This document shows positions 1 to 25,519 of a stretch of 64,000 bases of DNA, piece by piece. Position numbers and translations under genes: made by a program. This DNA comes from Lepidodermella squamata. Taxonomy: Eukaryota > Animalia > Gastrotricha. The DNA is taken from contig JBLDXI010000003.1 of assembly GCA_047495785.1 (NCBI GenBank), positions 2,356,001 to 2,420,000 on the forward strand. Direction: 5' to 3'. Under the pieces are notes generated by a model, which saw only the letters and a program-made list of their open reading frames with translations, was not told where the DNA came from and did not search any database. Positions within the stretch are counted from its first letter, which is position 1. Each line of letters opens with the position of its first letter.

Positions 1-197
1 CGACTCATGCGCTTTGCTTTAACGGCGCAATCTTCGTGGCGATATAGCCATCTTTCAACGCGCAATGGAGAATCTTTGATCTCGGCAGCCACGGCTCGAG
101 ACAATGACCTACGCGATATCGCCTTATCTTTTTTCCACTCATCGAGGCGACGGCTTATAACATCAACTTGCCAGGGCTCGAAAGAGAACTTCAACAT
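1..197 (-). CDS. Type A multi-homeodomain gene, copy A0 (5' end only; runs off the window)
   Basis: ATG at 197 gives MLKFSFEPWQVDVISRRLDEWKKDKAISRRSLSRAVAAEIKDSPLRVERWLYRHEDCAVKAK, closely similar to exon 1 of copies A2 (13880) and A3 (23846). Confidence 0.8.
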   Translation of the reverse strand, partial: MLKFSFEPWQVDVISRRLDEWKKDKAISRRSLSRAVAAEIKDSPLRVERWLYRHEDCAVKAKRMS

Positions 198-1512
198 TAT
201 TCTACAAAAATGTATTAGCAAAACGCTTATTATTTTTGATTTATCTGCCTGGAGGTTGATTCGTTCTCCCCAAGTATGTTTTTCGAGAGTTCGAGAAATC
301 AGTTTGTGAGCTGGTGGGTGTATGCGATGCGCTGTGTACGTATGTTTTTCCTCGTATTCGTTAGAAAAAAATTAGAAACGAGTTTGTGCGAGAACCTTAA
401 CCATCGGAAACTGAGATTAAATAAAGCGTGTAATTTTTGATGGTTTTGTTGAAAATACGAAAATTAAATATTCCGATGGTTCCGAGGCTTCAAGTTGAAA
501 TGGTTCGAGAAAAGAAAATAAGTTTCGATGGTTTCATTTTACTTCGAGAGTTGGTGAGCAATTCATCACGCCCCAGATCGTTACTTCTAGTGAGAACGCT
601 AACAAAATGCAAGCTTTGTAAAAAGCTATCAAGTGAGCATTGACTACCTAATTAATAATTGACCGTTAAAGAAATAAAAAGGATATTTGCCGAATTTTAG
701 CGTTTTTTCTGTATTTTTTAGCAAATCGCAAATTGAATTTCGATTTGAAAAGGGACGATTTTTGGATTCCAAGACATTAGTACTCTGTTTTTCTGGGGGA
801 TTTCGAATTTTCAAAATTCAGACCTCTAGGAGGCTTCCGTCTACCGCAAAAAACGAAAGACCCAGAGTGTTGCCTAAGAAACCTTTAGGTTGATTTAGGT
901 TGACGTGAAAGCACAAGCTTGATTCCATCAACATTTTTGATTAAATAGCAAGATTCCTCACGTTAGATTACCCCGAAAAAACCTGGTCTGTGCATTATAA
1001 AATAGCATCAGACCTCTCTTTGATATCGTTCGACTCCTCGTTAATTGATCTTGGAAGCGGCATCAAAACCTCACGATGTCAAAAGTTTCGTCAAACCCCA
1101 TTTTTCACTTGTTAACGGTCATTTTCGATTTTCTGATAAGGATATAATTTTTCTAATTTTAAGAGTGGAAGATACAAATGAACAAGATTCTCAGGAGTTC
1201 TGTCATTCAGTTATAATAAAAACAATTAGAGAAAACAAAATTACAGTTAAAAAAGAATTATATTTAAAGCATTTGAATATACATGAATTTTCCGCTATTT
1301 CAAGCAACTGCAGAGCTGTAGAACGAGCAGTTGCTTCAAAAGTCGAGTTATGAACGATGCAAAGCGGACCGCAAAGCCGTTCACAAAACATTTCCCAAAA
1401 TAATGAAAATATTTCCTCTGAAAAAAAGAAAAAACCAATTCAATTCCAAAGTTCCTCGAATTCAACTAAATTTACTTAATTTTCAAAATCCATTCTTTAT
1501 TTTACTTCGCTA

Positions 1513-1678
1513 TCGTTCGTGGCGCGGAAGAACCCGCACTTCGATGATTTTTTGCCCTGACTGTACCCCGCGAGTACAGCCTTGGATACTATATGCAATA
1601 CTGCGCGTTATGCTGTACTCGCGGGTACAGTCAGGGCAAAAAATCATCGAAGTGCGGGTTCTTCCGCGCCACGAACGC
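1513..1678. mobile_element. Short foldback element / MITE
   Basis: Near-perfect inverted arms of about 67 bp (1514-1580 vs 1612-1677, cgttcgtggcgcggaagaacccgcacttcgatgatttttt...) around a 31-bp spacer, with TA on both flanks. Confidence 0.85.
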
Positions 1679-2209: not shown

Positions 2210-3503
2210 TTAAGAAGAAACTCTTTTGACACGCTTCCTCGATATGCCATTTTCCAAGCGTTTCCGCGTGAAAAACTTTCCAGCTTGACGCCAACCGACT
2301 AAAAAACACTCCACAAGCGTCTGAAGCCTTTGTTTCGTCAATACAGGTGACTCGTCGAACGCCTTGGTAAGAGACAAAATCTGAGCGGCATTCAACGGCG
2401 GACTTACAGGTTTCCTAGGCACGAGATCACAACGCTGCTTCAAACACTGCCTCCTAAACCAGCCCATGATGGCTTTTTTGTTGATAGAAAGCTCTTCAGC
2501 CAATGATTCGAAAATTCGGTCGTCGAATTTTCCGCCTTTCTCTTTTTGATCACGGAGTAGGTCGTGCATTCTTTTGAGCTGTTCTGGGGAAAATAACCTG
2601 CTCCGAGTCCGAGTTTGACTAGGCATGAGACTGCGACGTTGCTTCACGCGCTGCTTCCTAAACCAGCTCGTGATTGATCGGCGTTGGACAGCGAACTCTT
2701 CTGCCAACAGCTTGTACACATTGACGTCAAATTTCTCGCCTTTCTCTCTTTGTTCACGAAATCGGTCTTGCATTATCTTGAGCTGCTCCGCTGAGAATAT
2801 CTTGCTCCGAGTCTCAGTTGAACCAAGCTACGCATTTTATTGAAAACAAACGAAGTCCGCAAAACAAGTCAATGTAGAGCAAACAATGGTGAAAACAAGT
2901 TAACTTACATACCTCAGACGTTCGCCTTGCTTTGACCCAACAAGCAATAGACCGCTTAGATAGACTCATTCTGGCAGCCAATTGATCGACGCGATCAACA
3001 CTGAATGTGCTATTCCTTTCGTATTCCTGACGAAATAATAAACATTTGCGAGCAACTTTAAATTGAATGTAAAAAAGAAACCGTTTCAAGGATGGTTCTG
3101 AATTTCTCGCTTATTCTGGCATTCCTCGGCATTCTCTCCAGGTGAGAGCTTGCACGAATTATATACCTCGCTCTATAGAACCAACACGATACTTCACGCG
3201 GGGTCAAACCAGCATTGCTTGCGATTTGTGTGATATCTTCTTTCCGTGGATAAGCGCTGTTTTGGAAGGCAGCGACTAAAATCTTCAGCTGTGATGGACT
3301 CTTCGACTTTCTTCTAACAGCGCGATCTTCGTGGTGTAATTGGCTCGCAATGTCCATTTTTAAACACGTAATGGAGATTCTTTGACTTCGGCAGCCACAG
3401 CTCGGGACAACGCCTTACGTGATATCGTCTCAACCTTTCCCCACACTTAGAGACGATAAAGTAAAATATCAACTTGCCAAGGCTCGAAACAGCACTTAAA
3501 CAC
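2210..3503 (-). pseudogene. Type A multi-homeodomain gene, copy A1 (first homeodomain disrupted; possible 5-homeodomain product from ATG 3357)
   Basis: The start is mutated to GTG (3503), with in-frame TAA at about 3447 and 3360 and a frameshift. Downstream exons 3357-3082, 3026-2913 and 2827-2210 join in phase 0 with GT-AG introns and encode homeodomain-like repeats (EVSCWFYRAR, SITSWFRKQR, AIMGWFRRQ). Confidence 0.8.
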
Positions 3504-4078
3504 TAGCCTACAAAATATATAGCAGCAACTCATTAACTTTTCAATATATCTGCCTGGAGGTGGACTAACATCTAACTCTCCTCCATAAGGACGTTTTTCG
3601 AAGGTCAGCAGTCAGCAGAGAGTGAGCACGTCATCACTTCGCCGGATCGTTGAACTCTTTGCAAAAAACTGGAAAAATGCAAACTTCGTATGAGCTATCA
3701 AATGAGCATTGAGATCGTAGCGATCATAGTGCACACGGGGATACGAGTTAATTTTTTAATTAAGGAAGACTTTTGTCAAAAATTCCTCGATATGCTTGAT
3801 ACGTCACATTCGTTGGATGGATGGGCCGAGGCCATGAGTCCCGAATGAGCGCTCTTTCGAGGAGTCTTTAGGACAGCTAAAGAATATTCGAAGACTTTTG
3901 TCATTTTCGGAATGTTCGGAACAAAAGAACTAGCTTTTCAGGAGTTCTGTCATTTAGTTCTATTGAAATCCTAACAAATTAGAGAGAAATCAAAATGACA
4001 GTTAAAAATGATTCATATCGAAAGCCTCTGAATACATGAAAGATGTTTCGTCGTAAAATTGTTCATCAATGACCGGCA

Positions 4079-5308
4079 TCACAGCAGTAAGTCAGCTTGA
4101 GATTCAATATCACTGAACAACAGAAAATCGGCCAAACACTTTGGCAGGCCGAAACTCGCTAGAGCAGTCTGTCTTCGAGACATACCCATTGGCAAAGTCC
4201 GCAAAATCACGTGCCGGCACGACGATTGCAAAGACTCCGGTAAAGACTGAGCAACAAACTTGGCCAGCTCAGATTCATGCAAATCTTCTTCTTCGAGAAT
4301 TTCATGTTTTTCCAAGTTCAGTTTTATCGCAGACATCTCGTTGCTCCTAGCAATACATACGATTCGCAAAGCCAAATTGGCATGGCTTCCTCCCCTGATC
4401 CGGTAATGAACATCAACACGCGACATTAACTTTTCCAAGTTAGAAGTCAACCGAATTCCGGCGCGTAAAAGCGGGAGGACTAAATATTTCACATTTTTCA
4501 CAAATTTCACAACTGGACTACAAATCGCAACATTGAGATCCCTCGAAAAGAACCTGTTTTCATAGTCATTCGGTAATAAAGCGTGGTCTATGAACCCTGC
4601 TAATATTTCCGGCCCGATCGTCGAAAGATCTGGTAGAGAATCGATTATTCTCGTAAAATCCCGTTCCTCGCGCATCCGAAACGTTTTTAGCCCTGGATTC
4701 CTCTCGAGATAAGAAAACAGCGTAGTCATGAGAAATTTGACTCGAGGCAGATTGATTCTCAGCTTGAAAAGCGTTAATGAGTGCGATATGGGGTGCCATT
4801 TCGGCTCCCAATTCTTTAAAGCCCCCATTTGAAGCAACAACTTGAAACTTTTCACGCCGCAATTATCAAAATTCGAAAAGTGCTTCATGATAAGATGAGC
4901 GCCAATGCATCCCGGCAAGTTCTTAATTTTGCCAGAAACTAATTTCAAAGCCTCATAATCGGAAAGAATTCCAGCGTTGAAAATGATCAAACCGTCAATA
5001 ACTTGGAATGTATCGAATTTCGGGCTAATTTTGTAGATATCAACGCATTCTTTGACAAACTGGGCCCGGATTACATCAACAGCAACCTTTGGGTGGGTAT
5101 CAAGGTAATCAGGATGAGGTGATAGATACAACATAGGCAGAAATTCGAAAACCTTGAAGTTCTTGAAATTTTGGTTCAAGCAATATTTGTAGTTACAACC
5201 AGTGGCGATTAATGCTTTTTCCAAACATTTAAAAGCAATTTCGCGGGCCGCCTGTGAAGCTTCGTCGTTGTGAACCACACACATGTTTCCATCCGTGCCA
5301 CACCACAT
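4079..5308 (-). CDS. SOCS-box protein (putative Elongin BC/Cullin-5 substrate adaptor), 409-aa ORF; 5' end uncertain
   Basis: The C-terminal PESLQSSCRHVILRTL...FGLPKCLADFLLF matches the BC-box plus Cul5-box pattern. The ORF is long and uninterrupted; the N-terminal region is not recognised. Confidence 0.75.
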   Translation of the reverse strand: MWCGTDGNMCVVHNDEASQAAREIAFKCLEKALIATGCNYKYCLNQNFKNFKVFEFLPMLYLSPHPDYLDTHPKVAVDVIRAQFVKECVDIYKISPKFDTFQVIDGLIIFNAGILSDYEALKLVSGKIKNLPGCIGAHLIMKHFSNFDNCGVKSFKLLLQMGALKNWEPKWHPISHSLTLFKLRINLPRVKFLMTTLFSYLERNPGLKTFRMREERDFTRIIDSLPDLSTIGPEILAGFIDHALLPNDYENRFFSRDLNVAICSPVVKFVKNVKYLVLPLLRAGIRLTSNLEKLMSRVDVHYRIRGGSHANLALRIVCIARSNEMSAIKLNLEKHEILEEEDLHESELAKFVAQSLPESLQSSCRHVILRTLPMGMSRRQTALASFGLPKCLADFLLFSDIESQADLLL

Positions 5309-6208: not shown

Positions 6209-9200
6209 GCACATTTCCGGGCCCGCCTATGTTTCGTCCGGGCGCGCGCACTGGTTGGCCGGCTGTTTCGACCAATGAGAGCGCGTAATCAGACCGCAGG
6301 CGCGCTGTTACGCCCTGCTCGATTGCGCGCGAGTATAATTACACACTTCACGGCCGCGCAGGCGAGGCCGCGCGGCAGTCGCGGTCGCAGTCTCGGCTGA
6401 ATTTTTGGCGCAAAATTCAAATTCAAATTTTGGCGCCAATTTTGAGGTGAAAGAAAATTCAAAAGGAAAATTCGTCATTACTCGTGAATCGTGCTATAAT
6501 ATTGTTCAATAATGACTAAACGCATTGCTGATCTGCCGCCTGACGTCGAGGCTATCTTGCCTGACGATGAACACCGTCTTCTTCACATCGTCACTAAATT
6601 CGAGCGGAAGAATGAGTCATCGTGGATTCTGCATTTTCGAGCGCCTTTCAAGTCAAACGAATGGGGCAGGTTTTTGGCCGGTGTACAGCGTCGCAGTCGA
6701 GTTGATTTCAAAGCTAAGCCACACGGAACGACGAAACCTAAAGGCATCAAATTCATCGCGAAGGAAGAGCTTGTGTGTAATCACGCTGACCACGAGAGCG
6801 GTGTACACGACTCGCGCAGAAAATGCGCCGCGCCCGGCGAAAAGGCGAAAAAACGGCAAGTCACCTCAAGCGGCGCTGCTCCGAAAAGCAAAATAACCGA
6901 TTGTACCGCATCGATCTCGCTTTCAGAAGTCGCACCACTGATCGACGACGGCACGCCAAAAAGTCGCGACGCAGCTCGAAAACGGCTGAGACGCGACCCG
7001 CTGATTACTTCGCACCCTACCATCGTCCAAATCGAGTGGCAGCATGACCATAATATTGGAGTCTTGGCTGCGTTAAGGTGGCGAAATCACGCCGAGGGCG
7101 TTGATACGGCAATGTTTCGCCATCTACAAGCCGAAGGTACAGCATCTGCAGCAATGCAAGCTTATAATAATGAGCTGGAGGAGCTGTATCCGGAAATACC
7201 CTGGTTGCAGCTGTCGGCTGATCGCTCGCTCTGCCCAACGCGCAAAGATTGGTACCACTTCGCCGATAAATTACAAGTAAGCACACACGGCGATCGTAAT
7301 GGAGAGTTAATGCGGTCGAAATTGAAGGAGTTAGCTGCGCAGCACTCGGAAACGTTTAGTTATCGCGAGACACTGGCGAAAAACGGCGAGCGGGTCTGGT
7401 GCTTGTTAGTTCGAACCCCGATGATGCGCCGTGTTTACGACACCGTTTCTGAAGCTCGGGACATCCTTTTTACCGATTCAACCGCCAGCTGCGATCTTGT
7501 AAACAGCTCTCTGACTTTGATAGTCAGCGCGTCATCAGCAGGCGCCTTGCCAGTAGCCGCCGCAATTCATTCATCGCAGACCGTCGATTGTTACAAGTAA
7601 GTTGAATGAATTTTATTTTATTTTTTATATTATATTTTTAGACATTTTTTTTAAATTTTATCCGAATTTTTTAATTTTAAATTATATCAAATTAAATTTT
7701 AAATTAATCTGCTAAAAAAACTGAATTTTACGGCGGAACTATTGTGCATTTTGACGTAGGGGGGAAATTTGCCGATGTGAAAATTTCTCAACCATTTTTT
7801 TAACTTGGGGCAATAATAAATTGATTTTTGTTATTTAATTCAATTTATTGTTTTTTTTTTAACAGACTGGCGTTTGGCATGTTCAAACAAACCTTGAACG
7901 GTGTTGAGCCAAAGCTGTTCTTAACAGACGACAGCGATGCAGAGCGGGAGGCTTTACGCCTTGTCTTTGTCAATTCCACTGTGTTGCTATGCGCATTTCA
8001 TATTCTCCAAGCCCTGTGGCGGTGGCTGACGAATAAAAAGCACAACATCGCTGCCGAAGACGCGCCGCTTTTGCTTCAACGTAAGTTCGGGAAATATTTA
8101 ACGCGATTGAATTTTAATTAGTTTTTTTCGCAGTGTTCCAAAATGTTGTTTTTGCACAAACCGAAAAAGAGTACGAAGCTGCACGTGGCGCTTTGCTCTA
8201 TTCGCCGCTTACTCGAAAATACATCAATTGGCGACTACACATCCTTGCCCACCTACAGCGTTCTCGCCTTTTCGTGGCTGCGTTTCGCAATTCCTACTCG
8301 CATGGTCACATGACCAACAACATCGTCGAAAGGTGAGCCCTTTATTTCTATATTATATGCAACAATTTTCAATTATTTTTGCTTCATTTCAGATGCGTTG
8401 GCATTTTAAAAGACGTGGTGTTATGCCGTGTTCGCGCCTTTAACCCTGTCGCGCTTGCGCAATTTTTGAGCGAAAAATTTGATAATTTTTTTGCGAAAAA
8501 ACTTCTTGACTTTGCGAACGGTCGCAATGATTTGAAAACGGAATGGCTGCGCTACAAAGACGCGGCAATCGTCGAAATCGCCCAGAAAAACAGCGAAATC
8601 CAAGCATTTGATGTCACGACTGCGAAGGGTGATAATTATGTTGTAAATTTGGCGGCGTGGCTGTGCAGTTGTCCTTATGGTCGAAATGGCCGGTTTTGTA
8701 AACATTTGGTAAGTAAAAATTTGGTTATTTTAATTTATAAATTTTAATTTTATTTTGAAAATTTTCGGAATTTTTTTATATTTTTATTAAATTTTTCTAC
8801 GCTCGAATTTGTATAAATTTATGAGATTAATTTTAATTTTTTAATTTTTTTAATATTCGCTCAGGTTCATGTCGCTGCTGCTAACAATGTTGCGCTGCCT
8901 ACAAGCCGCATGGTCGTTGGAACTCCCGACGTTAAGAAACTCTTGGCGTATATTGCTGTCGGAATTTATTACGACGATGAACTTTTTCTCGGCCTGACTG
9001 AGGTCAACACCAGCGCGAACGAGAACGCTGCATCGTGTTCAGCTTTTGTTAACGTACCACCGTCCAGTGGCCTCGAAATCGCCGATAATAGCGAAACCAA
9101 TGCTATTACTATTGAGCAAGAAACCGACGAGAATGCGGGAGAAGAAAACGACGACGGAACGAAATTCGCCGAAGAGTCACTCGTTAATTTCAGGTCCATG

Positions 9201-9901
9201 TGCGCTAAAGTGGAACGTCTCATCGCTGAAAACAAGTCGAATGGCGGGCTTTTGAAGCAAATGAATAAATTCAGCCATCGGCTATCAACCCTCGCAGATA
9301 CCGGTGTCATGGCGATTGAGTCTTGGCTCGCCAGGGCCTTGATGAAGTCAGGCGGACATAATCGCGGGGCGCTTATTCATGTGCAGAGTACCGCGGTCGG
9401 CCGGCGGATGTTTAACGTCGGTGGCTCCAGGCCACATCGCGCCGGAAGGAAACCAAATGGGTATCGAGCGCCGAAAAACTACGCCATTCGCCCAAGAAAT
9501 TTTCGTGAGAGAAACGGCATTCCGCCCACTCAGTGACTTGAGATTATCTCGTTGTGAGCAATAATTTAAAATAATTTGAATTCTGATTCAGTCGTTTCAT
9601 AATTTTTAAATCGATGTATTCGTTACTTGTTTATAGCGCTTTCCATGACATTTGTTGTAAGCACTCAGCTCTGAAAGTATTTGAAATTTAGTTCTGATGA
9701 TTGTTGAAATGAAATAATTGGAATAAAGTCCTGTTCTGTCTCGTTTATTTGAGTGTCGCGCGCGGCGTTATGCAATGCAAAATGCGAGTGTGCGAGCGAG
9801 CGGCGGGCGGCGGCGGCGTAATAACGCGGTCTCATTGGTCGAAACAGCCGGCCAACCAGTGCGCGCGCCCGGACGAAACATAGGCGGGCCCGGAAATGTG
9901 C
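6209..9901 (+). mobile_element. Complete Mutator-like (MULE) DNA transposon, 3693 bp
   Basis: Perfect 72-bp TIRs (6209-6280 and 9830-9901, GCACATTTCCGGGCCCGCC...) flanked by an exact 9-bp TSD TTTGGAGAG (6200-6208 and 9902-9910). Confidence 0.97.
6512..9536 (+). CDS. MULE transposase with SWIM zinc finger, 5 exons, about 828 aa
   Basis: Exons 6512-7596, 7866-8080, 8134-8332, 8393-8708 and 8865-9536 join in frame through GT-AG introns (2487 nt). Motifs: ILFTDST (D1), FLTDDSDAE (D2), CAFH, TNNIVE (E) and SWIM CSCPYGRNGRFCKH. Confidence 0.93.
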
Positions 9902-11149: not shown

Positions 11150-13880
11150 TTATGAAGGCACTCTTTTGACAGCCTTCATCGATGTACCATTTTCCGCGCG
11201 TTTTCGCGTGAAAAATGTTTCAACTTGATGGCTGCTTACCGAAAGACACTTCGCAATCGCCAGAAGCCTCAGTTTAGTCAACACGGGTGACTCGTCGAAC
11301 GCCTTGGTAAGAGACAAAATCTGAGCGGCATTCAACGGCGGACTAACAGGTTTCCTAGGCACGAGATCACAACGCTGCTTCAAACACTGCCTCGTAAACC
11401 ACTGCATGATTGCTTTTCTTTTGATAGAAAACTCATTTGCCAATGATTTGAAAATGCATTCGTCGAATTTTCCGCCCATCTCTTTTTGATCACGTAGCAG
11501 ATCGTGCATTCTTTTGAGCTGCTCTGGAGAAAATAAACTGCGCGGAGTCCCAGTTTGAAGAGGCATGAGTTCGCGACGCTGCTTACTAAACCAGTGTGTG
11601 ATTGCTCGGCGTTTGATACAAAATTCTTCTGCCAACAGATCGTACACTTTGCCGTCAAATTTCCCGCCTTTCTCTCTTTGTTCACGAAATCGGTCTTGCA
11701 TTATCTTGAGCTGCTCCGCTGAGAATATCTTGCTCCTAGTCTCAGTTGAGCAAAGCTATACATTCATTGAAATAAATCGATGTATCATTCATCAGGTACG
11801 CGTAAACATTTGCGAATCTGAGTACCCTCAGCGGGAAGAAATCTAAATTTTTCGAAAACTCGACTTGCTATTACAAGTCCTTAACCGGTCCCTTGCACTT
11901 CGTTATTTAAGTATCAAGCTCAGCTTGAAGTCAGCTCAGCTTACGGCACGCTCAGCGTATTCACACCTTAGCTTAGCGTTCAAGCTCAGCTAGTTATAAC
12001 CGAAGCCAGCTAACCTTAGCAAGCTCAGCTCATCTTGCTCGCTAGTAAGCTGAGCTGGCAAACTGAACGTAGTAGAATATAAGTACGAGAATTTTGGTGT
12101 AGTGGAACACGCTGAGCTTGTACCCTGAGCTGGTTTGTCTCCGATCGTAAGTTCAGCTTGTCACCTGAGCTTATTAATTACACTATTAAGCTGAGCTAGT
12201 TTGGCTGAGCTTGTTCATGGTTTAGCTGAGCTGACTATAAGCTGAGCTTGTTACTTAAATAACGAAGTGCAACACGGCCCTTAACCCTTTCATGGCGGAA
12301 TTATTTATCTGCGGTAGAAAAAATATTTGACGGCAGTTTTAGGGGTTTTCGAACGCCCTGATCACGAGTTTGAAATCCGTTTGTCTTTATCTATCACTGT
12401 TAGGGCTGTACAAAAAGTGGCCGAAATCGTCCTATCCGCCCAGCTGATTTCAGGCGATTTTTCGTTTTCGAACACCCTAACTTTTGTGTTAGATGTGTTC
12501 ATTTTTGGAATTTCATATTCTAATTTACACCCATGAATGTCCCTAAGATTCCCTCTCACTTATATCACCGATCTCACTTTAAAAAAGTTTCCGAGGCTCA
12601 GCATTCAGATCTGAATTCAGCTTTTCCAGTTTTAGCTCGCGACAGTTTTTGCAGCACAAAAATCACGCACTCCGCCTGTATATAAGTCTGGGCGGATAGG
12701 ACGAATTCGGCCGGTTTGATTGTATCTCTATAGCGTCGTCATTTTTAATTGCCGACTCGAAAAAATTTACACAATGGTCAATGAGACTATGGGGGACACG
12801 GTGGTATTTTTTGTTGGATCAAAAAATGATCAGGAACCTATGAAATTTCAAGTTGAAAAAAATCGAAATTTCAATCTCAGGTTGACTATTTTCAAATTGC
12901 TGGTATGCCCTGACCATGCAAGATAACGGTGTCCCGGTCTCAAAACCTTGTAGCCAACATCGAAGAGCAAAGTCCTCAAAAGGGCGATCAAGAATTCATC
13001 AAATTCAATTTTCTGCGAATTTTCAAAGTCGAAATTCCGAAATCGTCCTTCCCGCCGTGAAAGGGTTAAATGGAGTGTATTTTAGGGGCATTTTCACACT
13101 CCGACAGGCCTTTTCTTGGGCGATCCGAGGTTAACCAGCTTTTTCGGATTTTAAAGATTAAACTACAGTCGGTGCAATTCTTTGTGCGCATTGTAAATTT
13201 CAAGGGTAAATTTAGTGCTGAAAGTTTTCCAAGGCCCAGGAATCGTGAGTGCCTTTACAATGGCCTGATGTAAAGCCAGCAATGGCGAAAATAAGTTAAC
13301 TTACCTCAGACCTGCGCTTTACAATGAGCCAACGAGCGATCGACCGCCAAGAAAGACTCAAACTAACAGCCAGTTGATCGACGCGATCAACGCTGAATGT
13401 GCTATTAGTTTCGTATTCCTGATAAATGGAAAAGTTTGCGAGCAACATTAAATTAAATGTAAGTCCAACCGCTTCAAGGATGGCTCTGCATTTCTTGCTT
13501 ATCTTTGTGTTCCTCGGCTGATTCTCCAGGTGAGAGCTTTTGCGAATTCTAAACCTCTCTCTCGCAAACCAACACGATACTCGACGCGGGGTCAGGCCAG
13601 CATTGCGTGCTATATCTGAGACTTCTTTTCGCTGTGGATAAGCACTGGCTTGAAAGGCAGCGAGTAAAATCTGCAGCTGCGGTGGACTAACTGACTTTGC
13701 TTTAATGGCGCAATCTTCGTTGCGATATACCCATTTTTCAACGCGTAATGGGCATTCGTTGATCTCGGCAGCCACGACTCGAGACAACGCCCTACGTGAT
13801 GTTGCCTTATCTTTTCCCCACTCTTCGAGACGACGGCGCAATACATCAACTTGCCAAGGCTCTAAAGAGCATCTAAACAT
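11150..13880 (-). CDS. Type A multi-homeodomain protein, copy A2, apparently intact, 6 homeodomain-like repeats (about 376 aa)
   Basis: Exons 13880-13470, about 13417-13304 and 11755-11150, all phase 0. The second repeat is near canonical (SPPQLQILLAAFQASAYPQRKEVSDIARNAGLTPRRVSCWFARERFR). Intron 2 is enlarged by two insertions. Confidence 0.85.
11885..12280. mobile_element. MITE with internal GCTCAGCT/AGCTGAGC repeats, in intron 2 of A2
   Basis: Inverted termini TTGCACTTCGTTATTTAAGTA (11893-11913) and TACTTAAATAACGAAGTGCAA (12252-12272). Many gctcagc units switch orientation near the centre. Confidence 0.8.
12285..13065. mobile_element. Non-autonomous piggyBac-like element
   Basis: TTAA TSD at 12281-12284 and 13066-13069; termini CCCTTTCATGGCGG and CCGCCGTGAAAGGG; internal repeats of gaaatcgtcct..ccgcc; no transposase ORF. 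Confidence 0.88.
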
Positions 13881-14634: not shown

Positions 14635-16329
14635 TTAATCCTTGATCCGTCTTCCTACACTTTCAAACCAACGTATCACCTGAAGAATGGAAATAACGTA
14701 GACTAATCGGATGCAACTCAGTAGGTTAATTACCATGTGCACAGGGCAGTCAAGAGCTTGCGCCAGTTTGCTTGCTCTTTCAACCGATAAACTTTGATCG
14801 AGTCTAAATTGCTGAACAAATACTTTGGTATGTTTACAGAAATCTTTACAAAAGCACTGGGGTATAAATGCACCTCCTGAATGTAAGATGTTTGTTGGCG
14901 GCTGAATAACATTCTTCTGCATTCAGGCGCTTTAGACTTCGTTTTACGAGAAATTATACAGCGATTGACGATATCGAATGACAAATGGATTTTGCAAGCC
15001 AGATCACGAACTTGGTCTTTAGATGGATTCGCAAAGTCTGCCATCAACTACTCAATAAATTTGCCACGCGCTACTTACATTGATACATTCATAAAATCAA
15101 ACCTGGTCAATTTGCTGTTGCTGGCACTTAGTTAATGTGGATTTCTTTCTCCGCTGAATTCCCATCTCCTCTCGTTTTTGCTCGTTATCGAAAAACACTC
15201 GGCGATTGCACCAAGCCTTTCTTGAGACAGAACAGGCGAAGAATCGAACTCCTTGGCGAGACTAGAAATAAGCGTGGAGCTGAGTGGCGCGAATTCTTTA
15301 TCAGGGACGTTCTGAAAACCGATTTCGCGGTACTCGTTCTGAAACCAGCGCTTGACAGTTCGGTGATCGATGCCAAACTCTATGCCTAGAGCTCGACAGA
15401 GCTCAAAATCGCATTTTCTGCCCTTTTCGACTCGGTTGCGGAATTACTCCCTCATTCTTTGTAGCTGCTGCTTCGAGAACGGATACCCAAATTTTTTCCG
15501 CAGTCGACGGAATCTGTTCTGAAGGGCCTCAATGGAAATCCCGAATTTTTTCGATCAAGTCGATCACATCTAGCTCTTGATAGCGTGCGATTTTTTATGA
15601 ACTCCTGAAATATAAAACCACTTCAATAGCTAGCTGCAATAGTCATTCCTGAACGCACTTCATGGCATAAATCTGACACATCGACAGTTGTCAAGGTACC
15701 AGCCAATTCCACATCATGCCCCAATCCACACATCACGCTGCGACATCTGCGCCTAGCAGCGATCCAGCGCGATACCGAGTGAATGGAAACTCCCGTTTTC
15801 GCTGCTAGTTGATCGACACGATCGACTGTAAACGCACTATTTGTTTCGTATTCCTGAAAATGAATAGCATTCGAAGTTCGCACATCCATAGTATATGAAT
15901 ATGGGTAACCATTTCCAACAATCTTCTGTGCCTATCGTTCATGGGCTGATTTATAGATTCTGTTTGGATTCCCAAACTATAAGAAAGCTTTCTCCTCGCA
16001 CGTCTGAACCAATTACCGACACTCTTCACGTTCAAACCAGTTTGTTTCGCCAAGTCTCGACGCACTGCTTTGGATGGAAAAGCGTCGTCTTGATACGCAG
16101 CACGTAAAATTTTCAATTGAGAAACACTGAATTTCTTCTGTACGATCGTACGAATGTCACGGTTTTGATTCTGCTGAAACCATTCTAACACGCGCCTCTG
16201 ATCACCGCCAATCTCGGTAGACACTGCATGACTCAACGCTCTGAGAGATGTTGCCTTATTCTTCTGCCACTCTCCCTGGCGATTACATAAAATTGCAAAC
16301 TGCCAAGGTTCGAATGCAAAGTTCACCAT
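14635..16329 (-). pseudogene. Type B multi-homeodomain gene, copy B1 (deletions, frameshift, stop); the only copy keeping the last homeodomain
   Basis: Exon 1 is intact (VKSVGNWFRRARRK). There are deletions relative to B2 around 15660-15750, a frameshift near 15555 and a TAA near 15445. Terminal exons give RMLFSRQQTSYIQE|QFRLDQSLSVERASKLAQALDCPVHM|VIRWFESVGRR. Confidence 0.8.
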
Positions 16330-17088: not shown

Positions 17089-17721
17089 TTAAGAAGGTGC
17101 TCTTTTGATAGCTTTCGTCGACGTACCACGTGTTTTTCCACCATTTTCCACACGTTTTTGCTTGAAAAATGTTTCAGCTTGACCACGACTGATTGAAAAA
17201 CACTCGTTAAAGGTCTGAAGCCTTCGCTTCGTCAACACGGGTGACTCGTCGAACGCCTTGCTTAGGGTCGAGATTTGAGCAGCATTTAACGGCGGCCTAC
17301 GAGCCCTCCTAGGGACGAGATCGCATCCCTGCTTCGAACACTGCCTCATAAACCAGCCAATGATGGCTTTTCGGTCGATAGAGTACCCTTTTGCCAATGA
17401 GTCGAAAATTATGTCGTCGAATTTTCCGCCTTTCTCTTTTTGATCACGGAGTAGATCGTGCATTCTTTTGAGCTGCTCTGGAGAGAATAAACTGCTCCAA
17501 GTCCCAGTTTGAAGAGGCAAGGGACCGCGACGCAGCTTCATGCGCTGCCTACTAAACCAGTTCTTTACCGATCGCTGTTCAACACCAAACTCTACTGCCA
17601 ACAGCTTACACATGTTGACGTAAAATTGCCCGCTTTTCTCTCTTTGATTAAGCAATAGGTCGCGCATCATCTTGAGCTGCTCTGTTGAGAATATTCTGCT
17701 TCCAGTCTTTGTTGAACCAAG
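17089..17721 (-). CDS. Orphan type A terminal exon (3 homeodomain-like repeats); its own upstream exons are missing
   Basis: An intact TAG acceptor at 17722-17724 opens a frame LGSTKTGSRIFSTEQLKMMRDLL...SVKNWFSRQR...AIIGWFMRQ. No type A exons 1-2 lie between it and B2. Confidence 0.7.
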   Translation of the reverse strand, partial: LGSTKTGSRIFSTEQLKMMRDLLLNQREKSGQFYVNMCKLLAVEFGVEQRSVKNWFSRQRMKLRRGPLPLQTGTWSSLFSPEQLKRMHDLLRDQKEKGGKFDDIIFDSLAKGYSIDRKAIIGWFMRQCSKQGCDLVPRRARRPPLNAAQISTLSKAFDESPVLTKRRLQTFNECFSISRGQAETFFKQKRVENGGKTRGTSTKAIKRAPS

Positions 17722-18543: not shown

Positions 18544-20159
18544 CTAAAATATAAAGCGATTGACGGTTTCGAATGCAAAATTAATTTTCCAAGCGAAATC
18601 ACGAACTTTAGAAGGATTAGCAAAGCCTGCGGTCAAATGCTCAATAAATTTGCCCCATGCTACATAAATTAATACATTAATTTGAAAAACCTGGTCAATT
18701 TCTTCTTGCTGGTTCTTGGTGAACACGAAGGACTTTTCCCTCTCCTCGAGCTTTCGAACAAAGACATTTGCAACCTGTTTGCGGCTTATCGAAAAACACT
18801 CGGCGATCGCTTCAAGTCTTGCTTCCGGCAACGCAGGCGAAGAGTCGAATAACTTAGTGAGACTCGAATTTTGCGCGGAGTCAAGTGGCGCAGAATCTGT
18901 TTCAGCGATATTCCGGAAACCGTTTGTGCGGCACTCGCTCTCAAACCAGTGCTTAACAGCTCGATGGCTGATACCAAACTCTATGCCGAGAGCTCGAAAG
19001 AGCACGATATCACATTGTTCGCCTTTTTCGACTCGATTGAGCATTAACTCGCGCATTATTTGTAGCTGCTGTTTCGAAAAAGGAGCGCCAACCGTTTTCC
19101 GCAACCAACGGAATCTGTTTTTGACGGAGTCGAAAGGAATTCCGAACTTGTTCGCAATATGATCGCGTCTAGCTGTACATAGTCTTGGATTCTCTATGAA
19201 CTCCTGAAACATCAGTAATAGCTAATTGCATGGTAATTCATGAACGCACTTTTTCCAAGGCATCGGTTTTCTCGCGATTGAATAATACGCGTTTGTTTTT
19301 ACCGCATTGGCGATGGCAATGGAAAAAATCCGAGACCTCAGCAGTTGTCCAGGTCCCAGCCAATTCAAAAGCATGTCCCAATCCACACCTCACGCTGTGT
19401 ATTTCTTCACCAGACTTCTCCATCTCAGTGCTCTCAGACGCAGAGTTGTTTGTGTACGATTGTTGGCGCTCAAAAGCTTCCCGCAACTATTAAACACATA
19501 ATTTAGACAGATAATGTAACGAAAGCGACCCACTTGAAGTGCCTCGGCTGGTTTTAGAAGTCGGTTGACACCCGAACTGCGCCTAGCAGCGATCCAGTGC
19601 AATACTGATGAACTGGAAAGGCCCGTCTTCGCTACTAGTTGATCAATACGACCGACTGTAAACGCACTATTAATTTCGTATTCCTGGAAATGAATTGTGC
19701 GAGTTAAAATCTCTATGGTAAATGAATATAGGTAACCATTTCCAACAATCTTCTGTGCCTATCGTTCATGGGCTGATTTATAGACTCTGTTTGGATTCCC
19801 AAACTATAAGAAAGCTTTCTCCTCGCACGTCTGAACCAATTACCGACACTCTTCTCGTTCAAACCAGTTTGTCTCGCCAAGTCTTGGCGCACTGCTTTCG
19901 ATGGAAATGCAGCGTTGTCTTGATACGCAGCACGTAAAATTGTCAATTGAGAAACACTGACGTTTCTCTGTTTGATAGCACGAATGTCATTGTTTTTGTT
20001 TCGATAAAACCAATCCCCAACGCGCATCTGATTCACGCCGATCTCGATGGATACTGCTTGACTCAACGCTTGTATAGATGTTGCCTTACTCTTCTGCCAC
20101 TCTCCCAGGCGATTACATAAAATTGCAAACTGCCAAGGTTCGAATGCAAAGTTTTTCAT
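18544..20159 (-). CDS. Type B multi-homeodomain protein, copy B2 (open through about 8 repeats, 3'-truncated)
   Basis: Exons about 20159-19737, 19684-19533, 19486-19251 and 19203-18544 join in phase 0 without stops. A premature TAG at 18544 is followed by loss of homology to B1 below about 18480. Confidence 0.75.
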
Positions 20160-21346: not shown

Positions 21347-23846
21347 TCAAGAGGGCAATTTTTTGACAGCCTTCGTCGACGTACCATTTTCCACACGTTT
21401 TCGCGTGAAAAACTTTTCAGCTTGAGTTCGACTGATTGAAAAACGCTCGACAAAAGTTTGAAGCCTTTGCTTTGTCAATACAGGTGACTCGTCGAACGCC
21501 TTGCTAAGAGTCGAGATTTGAGCGGAATTTAACGGTGGTCTGAAAGCCCTCCGAGGCACGAGGTCGCAACGCTGCTTCGAGCACTGCCTCCGCCAATTCC
21601 TTCTAAATTCCTTCGCCAATAAGTCGAAAATTTTGTCGTCGAATTTCTCGCGCTTCCCTTTTTGATCGCGGAGTAGGTCGTGCATTCTTTTAAGCTGCTC
21701 TGGTGAGAATAACCTGCTCTGTGTCTCAGTTTGACAAAGATGCATTCTTTTGACAGCCTTCGTCGACGTATACAATTCCACACGTTTTCGATTGAAAAAC
21801 TTACTAGCTTGACTTCGACTGATTGAAAAACGCTCGACAAAAGTCTGAAGTCTTTGTTTTGTCAATACAGGTGACTCGGCGAACGCCTTGCTAAGAATCG
21901 AGATTTGAGCAGCATCCAACGGCGGACTAACAGGTCTCCTCGGCACGAGAGCGCAACGTTGTTTCGAACTTTGCCTTATAAACCAGCCCATGATGTCATG
22001 GCCGTTAGTAGAAAACTCCTTCGCCAATGACTCGAATATTTTGGATTTCTCGAATTTCTCGCCTCTCTCTTTTTGATCACGGAGCAGATCGTGCATTCTT
22101 TTTCGCTGCTCTGGTGAGAATAACTTGCCCCGATTCCCAGTTTGCAAACGGTGCTTCACGTGCTGCCTCGTAAACCAGTCGACGATTGATTGGCGTTTAA
22201 CAGCAAACTCTTCTGCCAACAGATTGTACACTTTGACGTCAATTTTCCCGCCATTCTCTCTTTGCTCACGCAATAGGTCTTGCATAATCTTGAGCTGCTC
22301 TGTTGAGAATATCCTGCTCCGAGTCTCAGTTGAACCAAGCTACGCATTCATTGAAAGAAAAGAATCGATGTATCATTCATCAATTCATCAAGCACACGTG
22401 AACATTTGCGAATCTGAGTACCGTCAACTGGTGACTTTGTTCAGTGAGGTCACTTTTCATTTTGACATGCACATTTTCCAGCCCGTCTGTGTTTCCCCCG
22501 CGCGGGGGGTCGTTGCGCAACAATTCAAGATAAATCTAGCCTCACCCGCGCGCGCAACCGATCACGCCCGTGCGCCAAGTCTTAAAATAGGCATGCTATA
22601 AGAAATAGCCAATCCTTGAAAATCGGTCTGATTTGCAATAAAATAAAAAAAAATTGACTGCATAGCGGCTCAAAATAATATTTTCAATACTAAATCAAGT
22701 CCGAAGAATACGAAAATAAATACAGCGGAAGACAGAATTCGGTCATTGTCGAATATAGGCTATAAATGCATGTAAAACAGGGTCATGTTAGCCATAAAAC
22801 TTCACCATGTCTGAGTCAGTTTCCAGTCAGTTGGTCCCGATATTATCTGAAATGGCAATCTGAAAATTGCTGTTCCCAAAACGTTACCCATTTCAAGCCC
22901 TAAATGGGTTGTATTCACGAGCATTGTACGCAACCCGGCTAGCCTTTTCCTGGGTTATCTAACGATACCCCACGGGGTCTTTATCTTCGACTTTGAGATG
23001 CCGAGGTCAACCCCTTTTCGCATGCCAAAGCAACCCCACTGTTCAAATTATTCTCAGTTGACGGTACGTGTATGAAAAAAGAATAATCAGCTTTTTCAAT
23101 ACTTCAATAACCAGTCAACCACCTTTTTCGTATTTCGTATTTTAAATACGTTCGGTGCGTTTCTTTGCGGACATGTTGTATTTCAAGCATACATCTATTT
23201 ACTTGGAAGGTCCGGAAATCGCGACTGGCTAGCTCCTAGATTGTTGCCTAACTTGGAGAAAATAAATTAACTTACCTCAGACCTGCGCTTTCTATTGAGC
23301 CAAAAAGCAATCGAGTGTCTAGAAAGACTCAAATCGGCAGCCAGTTGACCGACTCGATCAACGTTGAATGTGCTATTCTTCTCGTATTCCTATTAAAATG
23401 GTTGAAATTTGAGTGCAACTTTCAATCGAATGTAACAGTCTAACCGTTTCAAGGATGGCTCTACATTTCTCGCTTATTCTTCCGTTCCTCGGCAGATTCT
23501 CCTGCTGGGCTCTAATACGACTTCTACGCATCGCATTGATGAACCAATACGATACCTTACGCGGGGTCAGACCTGCCTTGCTTGCGATTTTCAAGATATC
23601 TTCTTTCAGTGGATAAGCGCTGGATTCAAAAGCAGCGGATAAAATGCACTGCTGTGACGGACGTTTGACATTTCTTTTAATGGTGCGATCTTCGTGGCGC
23701 ATTATCCATCTTTCAACGCGGGATGGGTATTCGTTGATTTCGGCAGCCACTGCTCGAGACAATGACCTACGCGATATCGCCCTATCTTTTTCCCATTCTT
23801 CGAGGCGAAGGCGTAAAACATGAACTTGCCAAGGCTGGAAAGACAT
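21347..23846 (-). CDS. Type A multi-homeodomain protein, copy A3, 8 repeats through internal duplication of the last two
   Basis: Exons about 23846-23445, 23388-23276 and 22339-21347 are in frame. The block LFSPEQ.KRMHDLLRDQK...PPL..AQIS.LSKAF.ESPVLTKQRLQTFVERFSISR occurs twice. Confidence 0.85.
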
Positions 23847-24129
23847 TAGCCTAGATAATATAGAGATGCAACACTTTTAGTATTTTCGATGTTGATATAC
23901 AAAGGTTTACCAGAATTACACTCGTCTTCAGTTGTTCAGAGATGTTTGCAAAATTAGCCGTAAAATATGAATAAAATGAAATTATCATTGTTCATGAATA
24001 TTCTATGAATACTTTTTAAATTCAAGAGGCACGCTGCAGGGGAAAAGTAAGCCAAAAGTGACCAAAAGTAAGTACTAAGCAGGATTCGAGATATTTCCCG
24101 GATGGCACACACGTCTCACATTCAATCAA

Positions 24130-25519
24130 CAGTTCGATGATGAATATCATTCTTCTGCGTTCGGGCGCATTCGATTTCGATTATGAGAAGTCGATAAGTC
24201 GAACTACTTGGATATACTCAAAATTTGCGCGGAGCTAAGTGGCGCAGATTCTGGCTCAGGAATATCCTGGAAACAGTTTTTGCGGAACTCAATCTCAAAC
24301 CAGCGCTGAACAGCTCGGTGATCCACACCAAACTCTATACCGAGAGCCCGATAGAGCACGATATCGCATTGTATACCTTTCTCGACACGGTTGAGCAATA
24401 ACTCGCGCATTATTTGCAGCTGCTGATTCGAGAACGGAACGCCAACCGTTTTCCGTAGACGACGGAATCTGTTCTGGACGGCCAATGAGGAAATTCCGAA
24501 TTTTTTCGATAGTAGATCACATCTGGCTGTTGGAAGTCTAGGATTTTCTATGAATTCCTAAAACATGACTTCTGTAATAGCTAACAGTGGTCATTCATGA
24601 ACGCACTTTTTCAAGATCTTCAATTATTTCGCGGCTTAATATTACGCGTTTGTACTGACCGCATTGGCGATGGGAATGGAAGAAGTCTGATACCTCTACA
24701 GTTGTCCAGGTCCCAGCCAATTCCAGAGCATGTCCAAATCTACACACCACTCTGTGCTTCCCTTCGATAGACTTATCCTTCTCAGTGCTCTCAGACGCAG
24801 GGTTGTTCATGCTCGATCGCTGGCGCTCAAATGCTTGTCGCACCTATCAAACACATATTTTAGACAGATAATGTAACGAAAGCGACTAACTTGAAAAGCC
24901 TCGGCTGGTTTTAGAAGTCGGTTGACACCCGAACTACGCCTAGCAGCGATCCAGTGCGATACTGATTTACTGGAAACTCCCGTTTTCGCGGCTAATTGAT
25001 CAATACGATCGACTGTAAACGTACTATTTGTTTCGTATTCCTGAAAATATATTGTCTTCAAAGTTGGCATCTCTAGGTTAAATGAATATGGGTAACTATT
25101 TCCAGCAATCTTCTGCACCTATCGCTCATGGGCTGATTTCTAGATTGTGTTCGGATTCCCATGTCATAAGAAAGCTTTCTTCTCGCATTTTTGAACCAAT
25201 AGTCAACCCGCTTCAGGTTCAATCCAGTTTTGATAGCCAGGTCTTGGCGCACTGCTTTCGATGGAAAAGCAGCGTTGTCTTGGTACGCAGCACGTAACAT
25301 TTCCAATTGAGAAACACTGAATTTCTTCTGTTCAATCGTACGAATGTCACGGCTTTGATTCCGCTGAATCCATTCTAACACGCGCTTCTGATCACCGCCA
25401 ATCTCGGTAGACACTGCATGACTCAACGCTCTGAGAGATGTAGCCTTATTCTTCTGCCACTCTTCTAGGCGACTACATAAAACTTTAAACTGCCAAGGCT
25501 CGAATGCAGGGTACACCAT
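24130..25519 (-). pseudogene. Type B multi-homeodomain gene, copy B3 (truncated after about 6 repeats)
   Basis: Same exon structure as B2. A TAG at 24204-24206 in repeat 7 is followed by a deletion that jumps to sequence matching the start of the last repeat. Confidence 0.75.

What the first reader, a model, noticed from the sequence alone, without database searches (positions are those of the whole stretch)
1..25519. Birth-and-death cluster of proteins built from 6-9 tandem divergent homeodomains
Seen: eight copies or remnants, in transcription order B3-A3-B2-A'(orphan exon)-B1-A2-(SOCS, MULE)-A1-A0. Type A has 6 repeats (8 in A3). Type B reconstructed from B1 and B2 has 9. Only repeat 2 is near canonical, and none has the WFxN asparagine (WFRRAR, WFKNAR, WFARER, WFINAM, WFYRAR). 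Established: homeodomain Asn51 is the key adenine contact, and most homeoproteins carry 1-2 homeodomains. Inference: a poly-homeodomain array with variable recognition helices could act like poly-zinc-finger proteins, reading long DNA sites such as repeats or transposons, or serve germline or early-embryo roles.
Basis: partly seen in the sequence, partly recalled or inferred. Interest (0 to 1): 0.78.

Follow-up and report, generated by a model that had tools for sequence, protein, structure and literature searches.

The report
Fast-evolving multi-homeodomain gene cluster
A small invertebrate genome (probably the gastrotrich Lepidodermella squamata) carries a row of duplicated and partly decayed genes for very basic proteins made of six to nine homeodomain-type modules; the residues that would read DNA bases change faster than the rest, but proteins of this kind are already known and their function here is untested.

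Summary
The cluster is real.

**State of the copies**
- A0, A2 and A3 keep full open frames and conserved GT..AG phase-0 introns.
- A1 has lost its 5' end.
- A' is a lone terminal exon.
- B1 and B3 are broken.
- B2 is open over seven repeats only.

**What the repeats are**
- Predicted structures show three-helix bundles, and their fold matches are almost all homeodomains.
- Only repeats 2 and 6 pass Pfam's cut-off on their own.
Most other repeats carry Arg51.

**Selection**
- Positions 47, 50 and 54 are the most variable in every repeat, with dN/dS about 1.3-2 against about 0.5 elsewhere.
- Open frames this long are unlikely under neutral drift.

**Novelty and function**
- No orthologue was found. 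The nearest proteins are unnamed multi-homeodomain orphans.
- Precedents exist, such as C. elegans ceh-100 with 12 homeodomains.
- This scan already reported sister arrays elsewhere in this genome.
- The proteins probably bind DNA, with specificity diverging between copies. Expression and targets are untested.

The parts
24207..25519 (-). B3: truncated type-B copy. Exons: e1 25519-25097, e2 25040-24891, e3 24843-24607, e4 24557-24207.
   Evidence: Splice sites are GT..AG, phase 0. e4 ends in an in-frame TAG where B2 has TTA and B1 has GAG. Downstream, the rest of unit 7 and unit 8 are deleted relative to B2 and B1. Repeat 2 reads WFKNAR, so it has Asn51.
21347..23846 (-). A3: intact type-A gene of 502 codons. 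Exons: e1 23846-23445, e2 23389-23276, e3 22339-21350 plus stop.
   Evidence: Open frame with conserved splice sites. e3 holds repeats 4-6 (22339-21740) and a duplicated 5-6 pair (21739-21350) whose first unit has lost W48-F49. Intron 2 (936 bp) carries fragments of dispersed repeats. Repeat 2 reads WFINAM, aligned to Asn51 of DUX4.
18547..20159 (-). B2: type-B copy, open over e1-e4 (units 1-7 and the start of unit 8). Exons: e1 20159-19737, e2 19683-19534, e3 19486-19250, e4 19203-18691; the ORF runs on to 18547.
   Evidence: The 3' units are degenerate compared with B1. An open frame of this length is unlikely under neutral drift (P 0.0015-0.0125).
17089..17721 (-). A': lone type-A terminal exon (repeats 4-6, 210 codons) with an intact acceptor and no e1 or e2.
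   Evidence: dN/dS against the other A copies is 0.46-0.54. It lies about 0.5 kb downstream of B2, so a B2-A' fusion transcript would be in frame, but this is untested.
14638..16329 (-). B1: type-B pseudogene. It is the only copy that still shows units 8-9 (15047-14638).
   Evidence: e1 16329-15910 is intact. After that come two deletions in e2-e3, a 2-bp insertion, an in-frame TAA and a further frameshift.
11150..13880 (-). A2: intact type-A gene of 376 codons and 6 repeats. Exons: e1 13880-13470, e2 13418-13305, e3 11755-11153 plus stop.
   Evidence: Per-repeat Pfam scores: R2 45.3, R6 26.5, R4 20.3, R3 14.9, R5 13.7 bits, R1 none. Structure models were built on e1 and e3.
12281..13069 (.). 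Dispersed repeat of about 790 bp inserted in intron 2 of A2.
   Evidence: At least 40 copies at 82-91% identity across the genome. This explains the 1549-bp intron, against 51-85 bp elsewhere.
6512..9536 (+). MULE-type transposase remnant, as fragmented ORFs.
   Evidence: PF10551 at 30.1 bits on 7828-8118 and a SWIM finger at 18.9 bits on 8379-8744. It sits between A2 and the SOCS-box ORF.
4079..5308 (-). SOCS-box ORF (409 aa) interleaved in the cluster.
   Evidence: PF07525 at 23.0 bits. Paralogues lie just downstream of A0 (28% identity) and next to the related homeodomain genes on contig C24 (31% identity).
2210..3611 (-). A1: type-A copy with a damaged 5' end. Exons: e1 remnant to 3082, e2 3026-2913, e3 2827-2213.
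   Evidence: Repeat 1 has Val in place of the start Met, an in-frame stop at 3449-3447 and a frameshift. e2 and e3 are open with intact splice sites. An ATG at 3357 could still start a five-repeat product.
1..197 (-). A0: start of an intact type-A gene that runs off the window. In window coordinates: e1 197 to -213, e2 -268 to -381, e3 -448 to -1275 (L005 1501-2973).
   Evidence: The gene has 451 codons. e3 holds a perfect 225-bp tandem duplication of repeat 5. Repeat 2 reads WFSEAR.

Best explanation
This is a lineage-restricted tandem cluster of two related gene types, A and B. Their products are very basic proteins made almost wholly of 6-9 divergent homeodomain-fold repeats.

**How it was built (shown)**
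- A B-A gene pair was duplicated as a segment, giving three units, and there are extra A copies.
- Repeats were duplicated inside genes.
- Copies then decayed. This is birth-and-death evolution.
- A0, A2 and A3 are kept as genes.
- The fold-forming residues are under purifying selection.
- The canonical base-contacting positions 47, 50 and 54 of every repeat change at or above the neutral rate.

**How it most likely works (inferred)**
- The products are nuclear DNA-binding proteins.
- Several tethered homeodomains, most with Arg51 in place of Asn51, each make a short non-canonical contact and together read a long or composite site.
- Paralogues differ in what they bind.
- Whether the targets are repeats, transposons or developmental genes is unknown.
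For: **Architecture and homology**
- Self-tblastn and blastn give the copy map and show homologous A-to-B intergenic segments.
- Gene models have conserved GT..AG phase-0 introns.
- Pfam PF00046 reaches 38-53 bits on repeat 2.

**Fold**
- The AlphaFold models have pLDDT 76-77 and show five complete three-helix bundles.
- Foldseek's top hits are almost all homeodomains and the VIA-align rows all are. They include DUX4 and tandem engrailed aligned over two domains, and single domains at Z about 9 and rmsd 0.6-2 A.

**Selection**
- Open frames are unlikely under neutral drift: P<=0.023 for each of A0, A2, A3 and B2.
- dN/dS is 0.45-0.57 in e3.
- Positions 47 and 50 are the most variable in all six repeats: mean 0.875 against 0.373, permutation P<5e-5.
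- Contact-set dN/dS is about 2 against about 0.5 for the rest.
- On the tree, N:S at contact sites against the rest gives Fisher P 1.5e-5. The excess over the pooled synonymous rate gives Poisson P 0.013.

**Chemistry**
- Net charge is +33 to +50 and K+R is 20-22%.
- W48, F49 and basic residues at 52, 53 and 55 are retained.

**Ongoing turnover**
- A0 holds a perfect 225-bp repeat duplication.
Against: - There is no RNA evidence.
- Asn51, the near-universal adenine contact, is missing from all repeats but two.
- The N-terminal arms are weak.
- Only R2 and R6 pass Pfam's cut-off on their own, and R1 has no sequence hit.
- The excess over neutrality at contact sites is only marginal (P 0.013-0.054). 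It rests on 17 codons and on related, possibly gene-converted, paralogues.
- Positions 47, 50 and 54 are solvent-exposed, so simple loss of constraint would also make them variable.
- Half of the copies are broken.
Confidence: 0.6

Rival explanations
1. The repeats are homeodomain-fold scaffolds that no longer bind DNA, like the homeodomain-only protein HOP. They would act as protein-protein or RNA-binding modules, and positions 47, 50 and 54 vary because they are simply unconstrained surface residues.
For: Asn51 is absent from nearly all repeats. The ESM Atlas nearest clusters include 'homeodomain-only protein', though at a low score of 0.82. HOP appears among the fold hits. The contact-site rate is only marginally above neutral.
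Against: Net charge is +33 to +50 and basic residues at 52, 53, 55 and 57 are conserved. Arg51 is itself conserved within repeats 1 and 4-6, which argues for constraint on this face. Other exposed positions are much less variable than 47 and 50.
Confidence: 0.2
2. The whole array is decaying junk. All copies would be recent pseudogenes, and the long open frames would be leftovers of recent duplication or gene conversion.
For: Five of the eight copies are truncated or broken. dN/dS in exon 1 is 0.70-1.15. No homologue or predicted protein from this locus is in the public protein sets.
Against: At the observed divergence (dS 0.2-0.5), open frames of 1.1-1.5 kb survive in at most 2% of neutral simulations per gene, even ignoring indels. 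Non-contact sites have dN/dS about 0.5. All splice sites of A0, A2 and A3 are conserved.
Confidence: 0.1
3. The units are not separate genes. Because every intron is phase 0 and all exons share one strand, B and A exons would be joined in longer or alternatively spliced transcripts (for example B2 exons spliced to the lone A' exon), giving proteins with ten or more repeats.
For: All introns are phase 0. A' keeps an intact acceptor and open frame although it has no e1 or e2, and it lies about 0.5 kb downstream of B2, whose own 3' units are degenerate. No clear polyadenylation signals were seen after the stops.
Against: A0, A2 and A3 each have a conserved ATG, a stop and a conserved 3' flank. 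B3 and B1 carry stops and frameshifts upstream of A3 and A2. There are no RNA data.
Confidence: 0.1

Closest known systems
C. elegans divergent multi-homeobox genes (ceh-100 with 12 homeodomains, ceh-99 with 4, ceh-83 with 5, duxl-1), PMC4448998
   Same: - Orphan, fast-evolving genes with many tightly packed, divergent homeodomains.
- Made by recent duplication.
- Sit in duplication-rich regions among expanded families of ubiquitin-ligase adaptors: fbx, btb and math there, SOCS-box and ankyrin arrays here.
- No orthologues in related species.
   Different: - No detectable orthology. None of the 20 best hits checked by name (of 42) in the 1.84-billion-protein search is a named nematode protein.
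- Here there is a head-to-tail cluster of two subtypes, Arg51 in most repeats, a 4-residue longer helix1-helix2 region in repeats 4 and 5, and introns at homeodomain position 18/19.
Mammalian DUX4 / double homeobox (PRD-like class)
   Same: - Best sequence match in the PDB for repeat 2 (E about 1e-6).
- Best two-domain structural match.
- Repeat 2 has the Tyr25-Pro26 signature that I recall as typical of PRD-type homeodomains (own knowledge, not tested here).
- Tethered homeodomains, with linkers of 6-16 residues here.
   Different: - DUX has two canonical homeodomains with Asn51, and it is restricted to mammals.
- Here there are 6-9 repeats, almost all without Asn51, in a spiralian.
- Similarity is at the level of the generic homeodomain only.
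Eutherian ETCHbox/Obox tandem arrays (LEUTX, TPRX, ARGFX), PMC8208926
   Same: - Young, lineage-specific homeobox genes in tandem arrays.
- High pseudogene fractions (45-79%).
- Positive selection that includes DNA-contacting parts of the homeodomain.
   Different: - Those genes have one homeodomain each and a known role in the early embryo.
- Here the proteins have many homeodomains and expression is unknown.
ZF-class multi-homeodomain proteins (ZHX1-3/Homez, ZFHX/zfh-2), PMC7144352 and PMC6118893
   Same: Several (3-5) divergent homeodomains in one protein, some of them without canonical contact residues.
   Different: - Those carry C2H2 zinc fingers and are ancient and conserved.
- No zinc finger or other domain is detected here, and the family is not conserved.
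KRAB zinc-finger protein clusters (a comparison of how it works, not of family)
   Same: - Tandem gene clusters evolving by birth and death.
- Proteins made of modular DNA-binding repeats.
- Repeat number varies.
- The base-contacting residues are the fastest-evolving positions.
   Different: - A different fold.
- No KRAB-like effector domain is detected.
- No link to transposons is shown.

Membership tests
Homeodomain superfamily (PF00046) | Three-helix fold with a helix-turn-helix, and helix lengths and spacing typical of homeodomains | tested here: met
   AlphaFold models of A2 e1 and e3 show five complete bundles. Foldseek and VIA-align top hits are nearly all homeodomains. Repeat 1 was matched only inside two-domain alignments, not on its own.
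Homeodomain superfamily (PF00046) | Score above Pfam's gathering cut-off (22.9 bits) | tested here: met
   Met for the proteins, and for R2 (38-53 bits) and R6 (26.5 bits) taken alone. R3, R4 and R5 taken alone score 13.7-20.3 bits, in register but below the cut-off. R1 has no hit.
Homeodomain superfamily (PF00046) | Asn51 in helix 3, the conserved adenine contact | tested here: not met
   Present only in A3 R2 (WFIN) and B3 R2 (WFKN). Position 51 is Arg, Lys or Gln in R1 and R4-R6, variable (Lys, Ala, Val, Arg) in R3, and Arg, Glu or Asn in R2.
Homeodomain superfamily (PF00046) | Sequence-specific DNA binding | not testable with these tools
   Only indirect signs: net charge +33 to +50 and retained W48, F49 and basic 52/53/55.
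DUX / double homeobox family | Two PRD-like homeodomains and orthology to mammalian DUX | tested here: not met
   There are 6-9 repeats. The PDB match to DUX4 has E about 1e-6 and is confined to repeat 2. No closer relative turned up in 1.84 billion representatives.
ZF class (ZHX/Homez, ZFHX) | C2H2 zinc fingers next to the homeodomains | tested here: not met
   No zinc-finger family was hit on any exon.
Nematode HOCHOB double homeodomain (PF17943) | Match to the HOCHOB profile (homeobox, cysteine loop, homeobox) | tested here: not met
   No PF17943 hit on e1 or any other exon at E<=1 to 10.
Nematode ceh-99/ceh-100 group | Orthology or specific sequence similarity | tested here: inconclusive
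   The profile search found 42 weak hits. The 20 best are unnamed or come from insects, fungi and unidentified eukaryotes. CEH-100 itself was not compared directly, because I had no reference sequence to give by id.
TALE class / spiralian SPILE genes | Three-residue loop extension between helices 1 and 2 | tested here: not met
   Repeat 2 has canonical 60-residue spacing, and Homeobox_KN scores below PF00046. Repeats 4 and 5 have 4 extra residues, not 3 (52 residues aligned to 48 profile positions).
KRAB-ZFP-like adaptive repeat arrays (a comparison of how it works) | Base-contacting residues of each module evolve fastest, with dN/dS above 1 | tested here: met
   The excess over neutral is marginal (P 0.013-0.054).
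KRAB-ZFP-like adaptive repeat arrays (a comparison of how it works) | Repressor or effector domain and transposon targets | tested here: not met
   No domain other than homeodomain repeats was detected. Targets cannot be tested here.

The most novel reading that the evidence does not exclude
The gastrotrich genome runs an adaptive, modular DNA-recognition system built from homeodomains instead of zinc fingers. It would be a superfamily with at least 90 R1-R2 double units on contigs C3, C24, C54, C23, C31 and C2. In it, poly-homeodomain proteins with Arg51-type helices read long sites. Repeat number and base-contacting residues would be continually reshuffled under positive selection, for instance against transposons or satellites. 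That would make it a convergent counterpart of KRAB zinc-finger clusters.
Probability: 0.15. Interest if true: 0.8.

Novelty: new variant of a known kind. Interest (0 to 1): 0.55.

Why it matters
Homeodomains are usually single, slow-evolving and fixed in their DNA-contact residues. This is a documented case in a barely studied phylum where they are strung together six to nine at a time and duplicated in clusters, and where the base-reading positions vary most.

If binding assays confirm it, this would show that the homeodomain fold can serve as a modular, fast-evolving recognition array. It would also give a natural set of Arg51-type helices for studying non-canonical homeodomain-DNA recognition.

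The finding also warns that homeobox surveys which discard 'aberrant' sequences miss a large part of this genome's repertoire. The published genome paper did discard them (PMC11660948).

Tried and rejected
**Searches that found nothing useful**
- A word-indexed search of 5.8 billion proteins with the terminal exon of A3 found nothing at E<=1e-3.
- The ESM Atlas gave only generic homeodomain clusters, at score 0.82.
- P0001 is not from this genome; its best match here is 27-30% identical.

**Repeats that could not be supported**
- Profile-profile comparison of B unit 4 against the R1-R2 profile gave no support (probability 0.3%).
- Pfam found nothing on B1 units 8-9.

**Signals that were uninformative**
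- A scan for polyadenylation signals downstream of the stops was uninformative.

**Ideas rejected**
- *Assembly artefact.* The copies are 70-87% identical, each with its own lesions.
- *Transposon-encoded helix-turn-helix array.* There is no transposase domain in the genes. The MULE element is a separate insertion on the other strand, and the repeat in A2 is intronic.
- *Human contig.* The genome is 121 Mb with 50-85-bp introns. It is not human.

- Joined spliced proteins were not sent to any search or fold tool. Everything was done exon by exon, by reference.
Full report
**Where and what**

The window is G000:C3:2356001-2420000 of a 121-Mb, 151-contig assembly. Its size, contig count and G+C fit the published Lepidodermella squamata genome (122 Mb, 157 contigs, 43% G+C; PMC11660948). 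That is a match of summary numbers only. Earlier notes of this scan reached the same guess. The contig is not human.

A tblastn of the candidate exons against the window finds every copy on the minus strand between 1 and 25528. It finds none in 26000-64000. The whole-genome search adds the rest of A0 just upstream of the window.

**Gene models**

All models were built exon by exon.

- *Type A* has three exons, with GT..AG phase-0 introns at conserved places.
  - A3: 23846-23445, 23389-23276, 22339-21350 (502 codons).
  - A2: 13880-13470, 13418-13305, 11755-11153 (376 codons).
  - A0: 197 to -213, -268 to -381, -448 to -1275 in window coordinates (451 codons).
- Introns are 51-85 bp, except intron 2 of A2 (1549 bp) and of A3 (936 bp). 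These hold dispersed repeats, among them a family of about 790 bp with at least 40 genomic copies.
- *A1* has lost its start codon. It has an in-frame stop at 3449-3447 and a frameshift in repeat 1, but keeps open e2 and e3.
- *A'* (17721-17092) is a lone terminal exon with an open frame and an intact acceptor.
- *Type B* has at least four further phase-0 introns.
  - B2 is open over e1-e4.
  - B3 ends in an in-frame TAG followed by a deletion.
  - B1 carries two deletions, a 2-bp insertion, an in-frame TAA and another frameshift. It alone still shows units 8-9, with introns at homeodomain positions 18/19 and 44/45.
- Intergenic stretches between the end of an A copy and the start of the next B copy are homologous between units (16686-16859 against 20776-20957). 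The duplicated unit was therefore a B-A pair.
- A3 has an internal duplication of repeats 5-6, with the first duplicated unit damaged. A0 has a perfect 225-bp duplication of repeat 5.

Intact, truncated and frameshifted copies thus sit side by side, which is birth-and-death evolution.

**Are the repeats homeodomains?**

- Pfam PF00046 scores 38-53 bits on repeat 2 of every copy.
- Taken one at a time in A2:

| Repeat | PF00046 score |
|---|---|
| R2 | 45.3 bits (passes cut-off of 22.9) |
| R6 | 26.5 bits (passes) |
| R4 | 20.3 bits (in register, below cut-off) |
| R3 | 14.9 bits (in register, below cut-off) |
| R5 | 13.7 bits (in register, below cut-off) |
| R1 | no hit |

- AlphaFold models built from the paralogue alignments (pLDDT 76 and 77) show three-helix bundles for R1, R2, R4, R5 and R6.
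- Foldseek's top matches are almost all homeodomains. DUX4 and a tandem engrailed construct align over two consecutive repeats.
- VIA-align gives Z about 9 and rmsd 0.6-2 A over 50-65 residues for R2.
- R1 was matched only within two-domain alignments.
- B units 4 and 8 have no support from sequence.
- Repeats 4 and 5 carry four extra residues between helices 1 and 2.

**Asn51**

WFINAM (A3) and WFKNAR (B3) are W48-F49-x-N51, and the A3 asparagine aligns with Asn51 of DUX4. The other R2 copies have Arg or Glu at this position. R1 and R4-R6 have mostly Arg51, and R3 varies.

**Selection**

- Pairwise dN/dS (Nei-Gojobori) is 0.45-0.57 in e3, 0.41-0.90 in e2 and 0.70-1.15 in e1, with dS 0.2-0.5.
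- In simulations at 0.08-0.12 substitutions per site per lineage, ignoring indels, the frames of A0, A2, A3 and B2 stay open in at most 2.3% of runs each.
- Mapped to homeodomain numbering, positions 47 and 50 rank 1st to 9th of 38-59 positions in all six repeats. Their mean variability is 0.875 against 0.373 overall, and none of 20000 permutations reached this. W48, F49, 52 and 53 are conserved (0.224).
- For the a-priori contact set 47/50/54, pairwise dN/dS is 1.2-5.8 (about 2 for the three intact genes), against 0.41-0.66 for the rest.
- A parsimony count on neighbour-joining trees gives N/Nsites 1.50 and S/Ssites 0.86 at contact codons, against 0.56 and 1.13 elsewhere.
  - Fisher P = 1.5e-5 for the contrast between the two sets.
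  - Poisson P = 0.013 for exceeding the pooled synonymous rate.
  - Binomial P = 0.054 within the contact codons themselves.
- The contrast is therefore solid. The claim of dN/dS above 1 is only suggestive.
That agrees with this result but is not independent proof.
- The A proteins are very basic, with net charge +33 to +50.

**Relatives**

- The e3 profile finds nothing outside this cluster in the genome except weak hits on C24, C23 and C54.
- The e1 profile (the R1-R2 pair) hits at least 90 places, chiefly the large arrays on C54, then C24, C23, C31 and C2.
- PF00046 alone gives 420 first-look candidates. All 150 that were scored are over the cut-off.
- This cluster is therefore one subfamily of a genome-wide expansion.
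- The closest relatives, on C24, are five-unit B-like genes. They too sit beside a SOCS-box gene.
- Against 1.84 billion representative proteins, the e3 profile gets 42 hits at E<=1e-3.
  - The best is an unnamed 431-aa protein with four canonical homeodomains (E 4e-21). It is not from this genome.
  - The rest are unnamed or hypothetical proteins with 2-12 homeodomains from insects, chytrid fungi and unidentified eukaryotes.
- No orthology to a described family was found.

**Known precedents**

- C. elegans has ceh-100 with 12 homeodomains, ceh-99 with 4, ceh-83 with 5 and others. They are orphan genes in a duplication-rich arm among fbx, btb and math families (PMC4448998).
- A published list of multi-homeobox genes names Hdx, Compass, Zfhx, Zhx/Homez, amphioxus Mux and Dux (PMC6118893).
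- ETCHbox arrays show tandem duplication, many pseudogenes and positive selection in DNA-contacting parts (PMC8208926).
- The gastrotrich genome paper analysed only Hox genes and filtered out aberrant homeobox sequences.

**Verdict**

The best reading is a fast-evolving family of poly-homeodomain, probably DNA-binding, proteins whose specificity residues diverge between paralogues. The rivals are non-DNA-binding scaffolds, pure decay, and longer fused transcripts.

**Limits**

- No RNA data were available.
- Joined spliced proteins were not submitted to any search or fold tool.
- The selection tests rest on few, related sequences.

Noticed in passing
window 4079-5308 (-); L005 3-1106 (-); L013 1357-2637 (+): Paralogous SOCS-box ORFs (28-31% identical) sit next to multi-homeodomain genes both in this cluster and in the related cluster on contig C24. 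The two gene kinds seem to have been duplicated together. In C. elegans the divergent multi-homeobox genes likewise lie among expanded ubiquitin-ligase adaptor families.
   Followed up: partly
window 35341-60416 (-): A tandem array of at least six intronless ankyrin-repeat genes (325-362 aa; ORFs at 35341, 40985, 44150, 49400, 55259, 59415). Pfam Ank_2 E-values reach 4e-60.
   Followed up: partly
window 12281-13069: A dispersed repeat of about 790 bp with at least 40 copies at 82-91% identity across the genome, inserted in intron 2 of A2. It is probably a non-autonomous transposon.
   Followed up: partly
L005 1501-2328 (window -448 to -1275): A perfect 225-bp tandem duplication of one homeodomain repeat inside the last exon of A0. 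It is either very recent or an artefact of an assembly made from amplified DNA, and should be checked against raw reads.
   Followed up: no
window 25812-26972 (-): A 386-aa ORF directly upstream of B3 with no Pfam family at E<=0.1.
   Followed up: no
window 39640-40317 (-) and 63284-63691 (-): Two related ORFs with a cysteine/histidine-rich stretch followed by a similar coiled-coil-like region, interspersed with the ankyrin genes. No convincing Pfam hit.
   Followed up: no
window 1511-1680: A palindromic stretch of about 170 bp (87% self-complementary) between A0 and A1.
   Followed up: no
window 13881-13892 and 198-209: An acceptor-like TTTTGTAG lies 4 nt upstream of the start ATG of A2 and A0. 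It could mark a 5'-UTR intron or a trans-splice site. A conserved motif also follows the stop codons of all A copies.
   Followed up: no
G000 contig C54 2.15-2.19 Mb and 0.60-0.64 Mb; C23 1.35-1.45 Mb; C31 0.13-0.14 Mb: Much larger arrays of the same R1-R2 double unit. The genome has at least 420 first-look homeodomain candidates, and all 150 that were scored are over Pfam's cut-off.
   Followed up: partly
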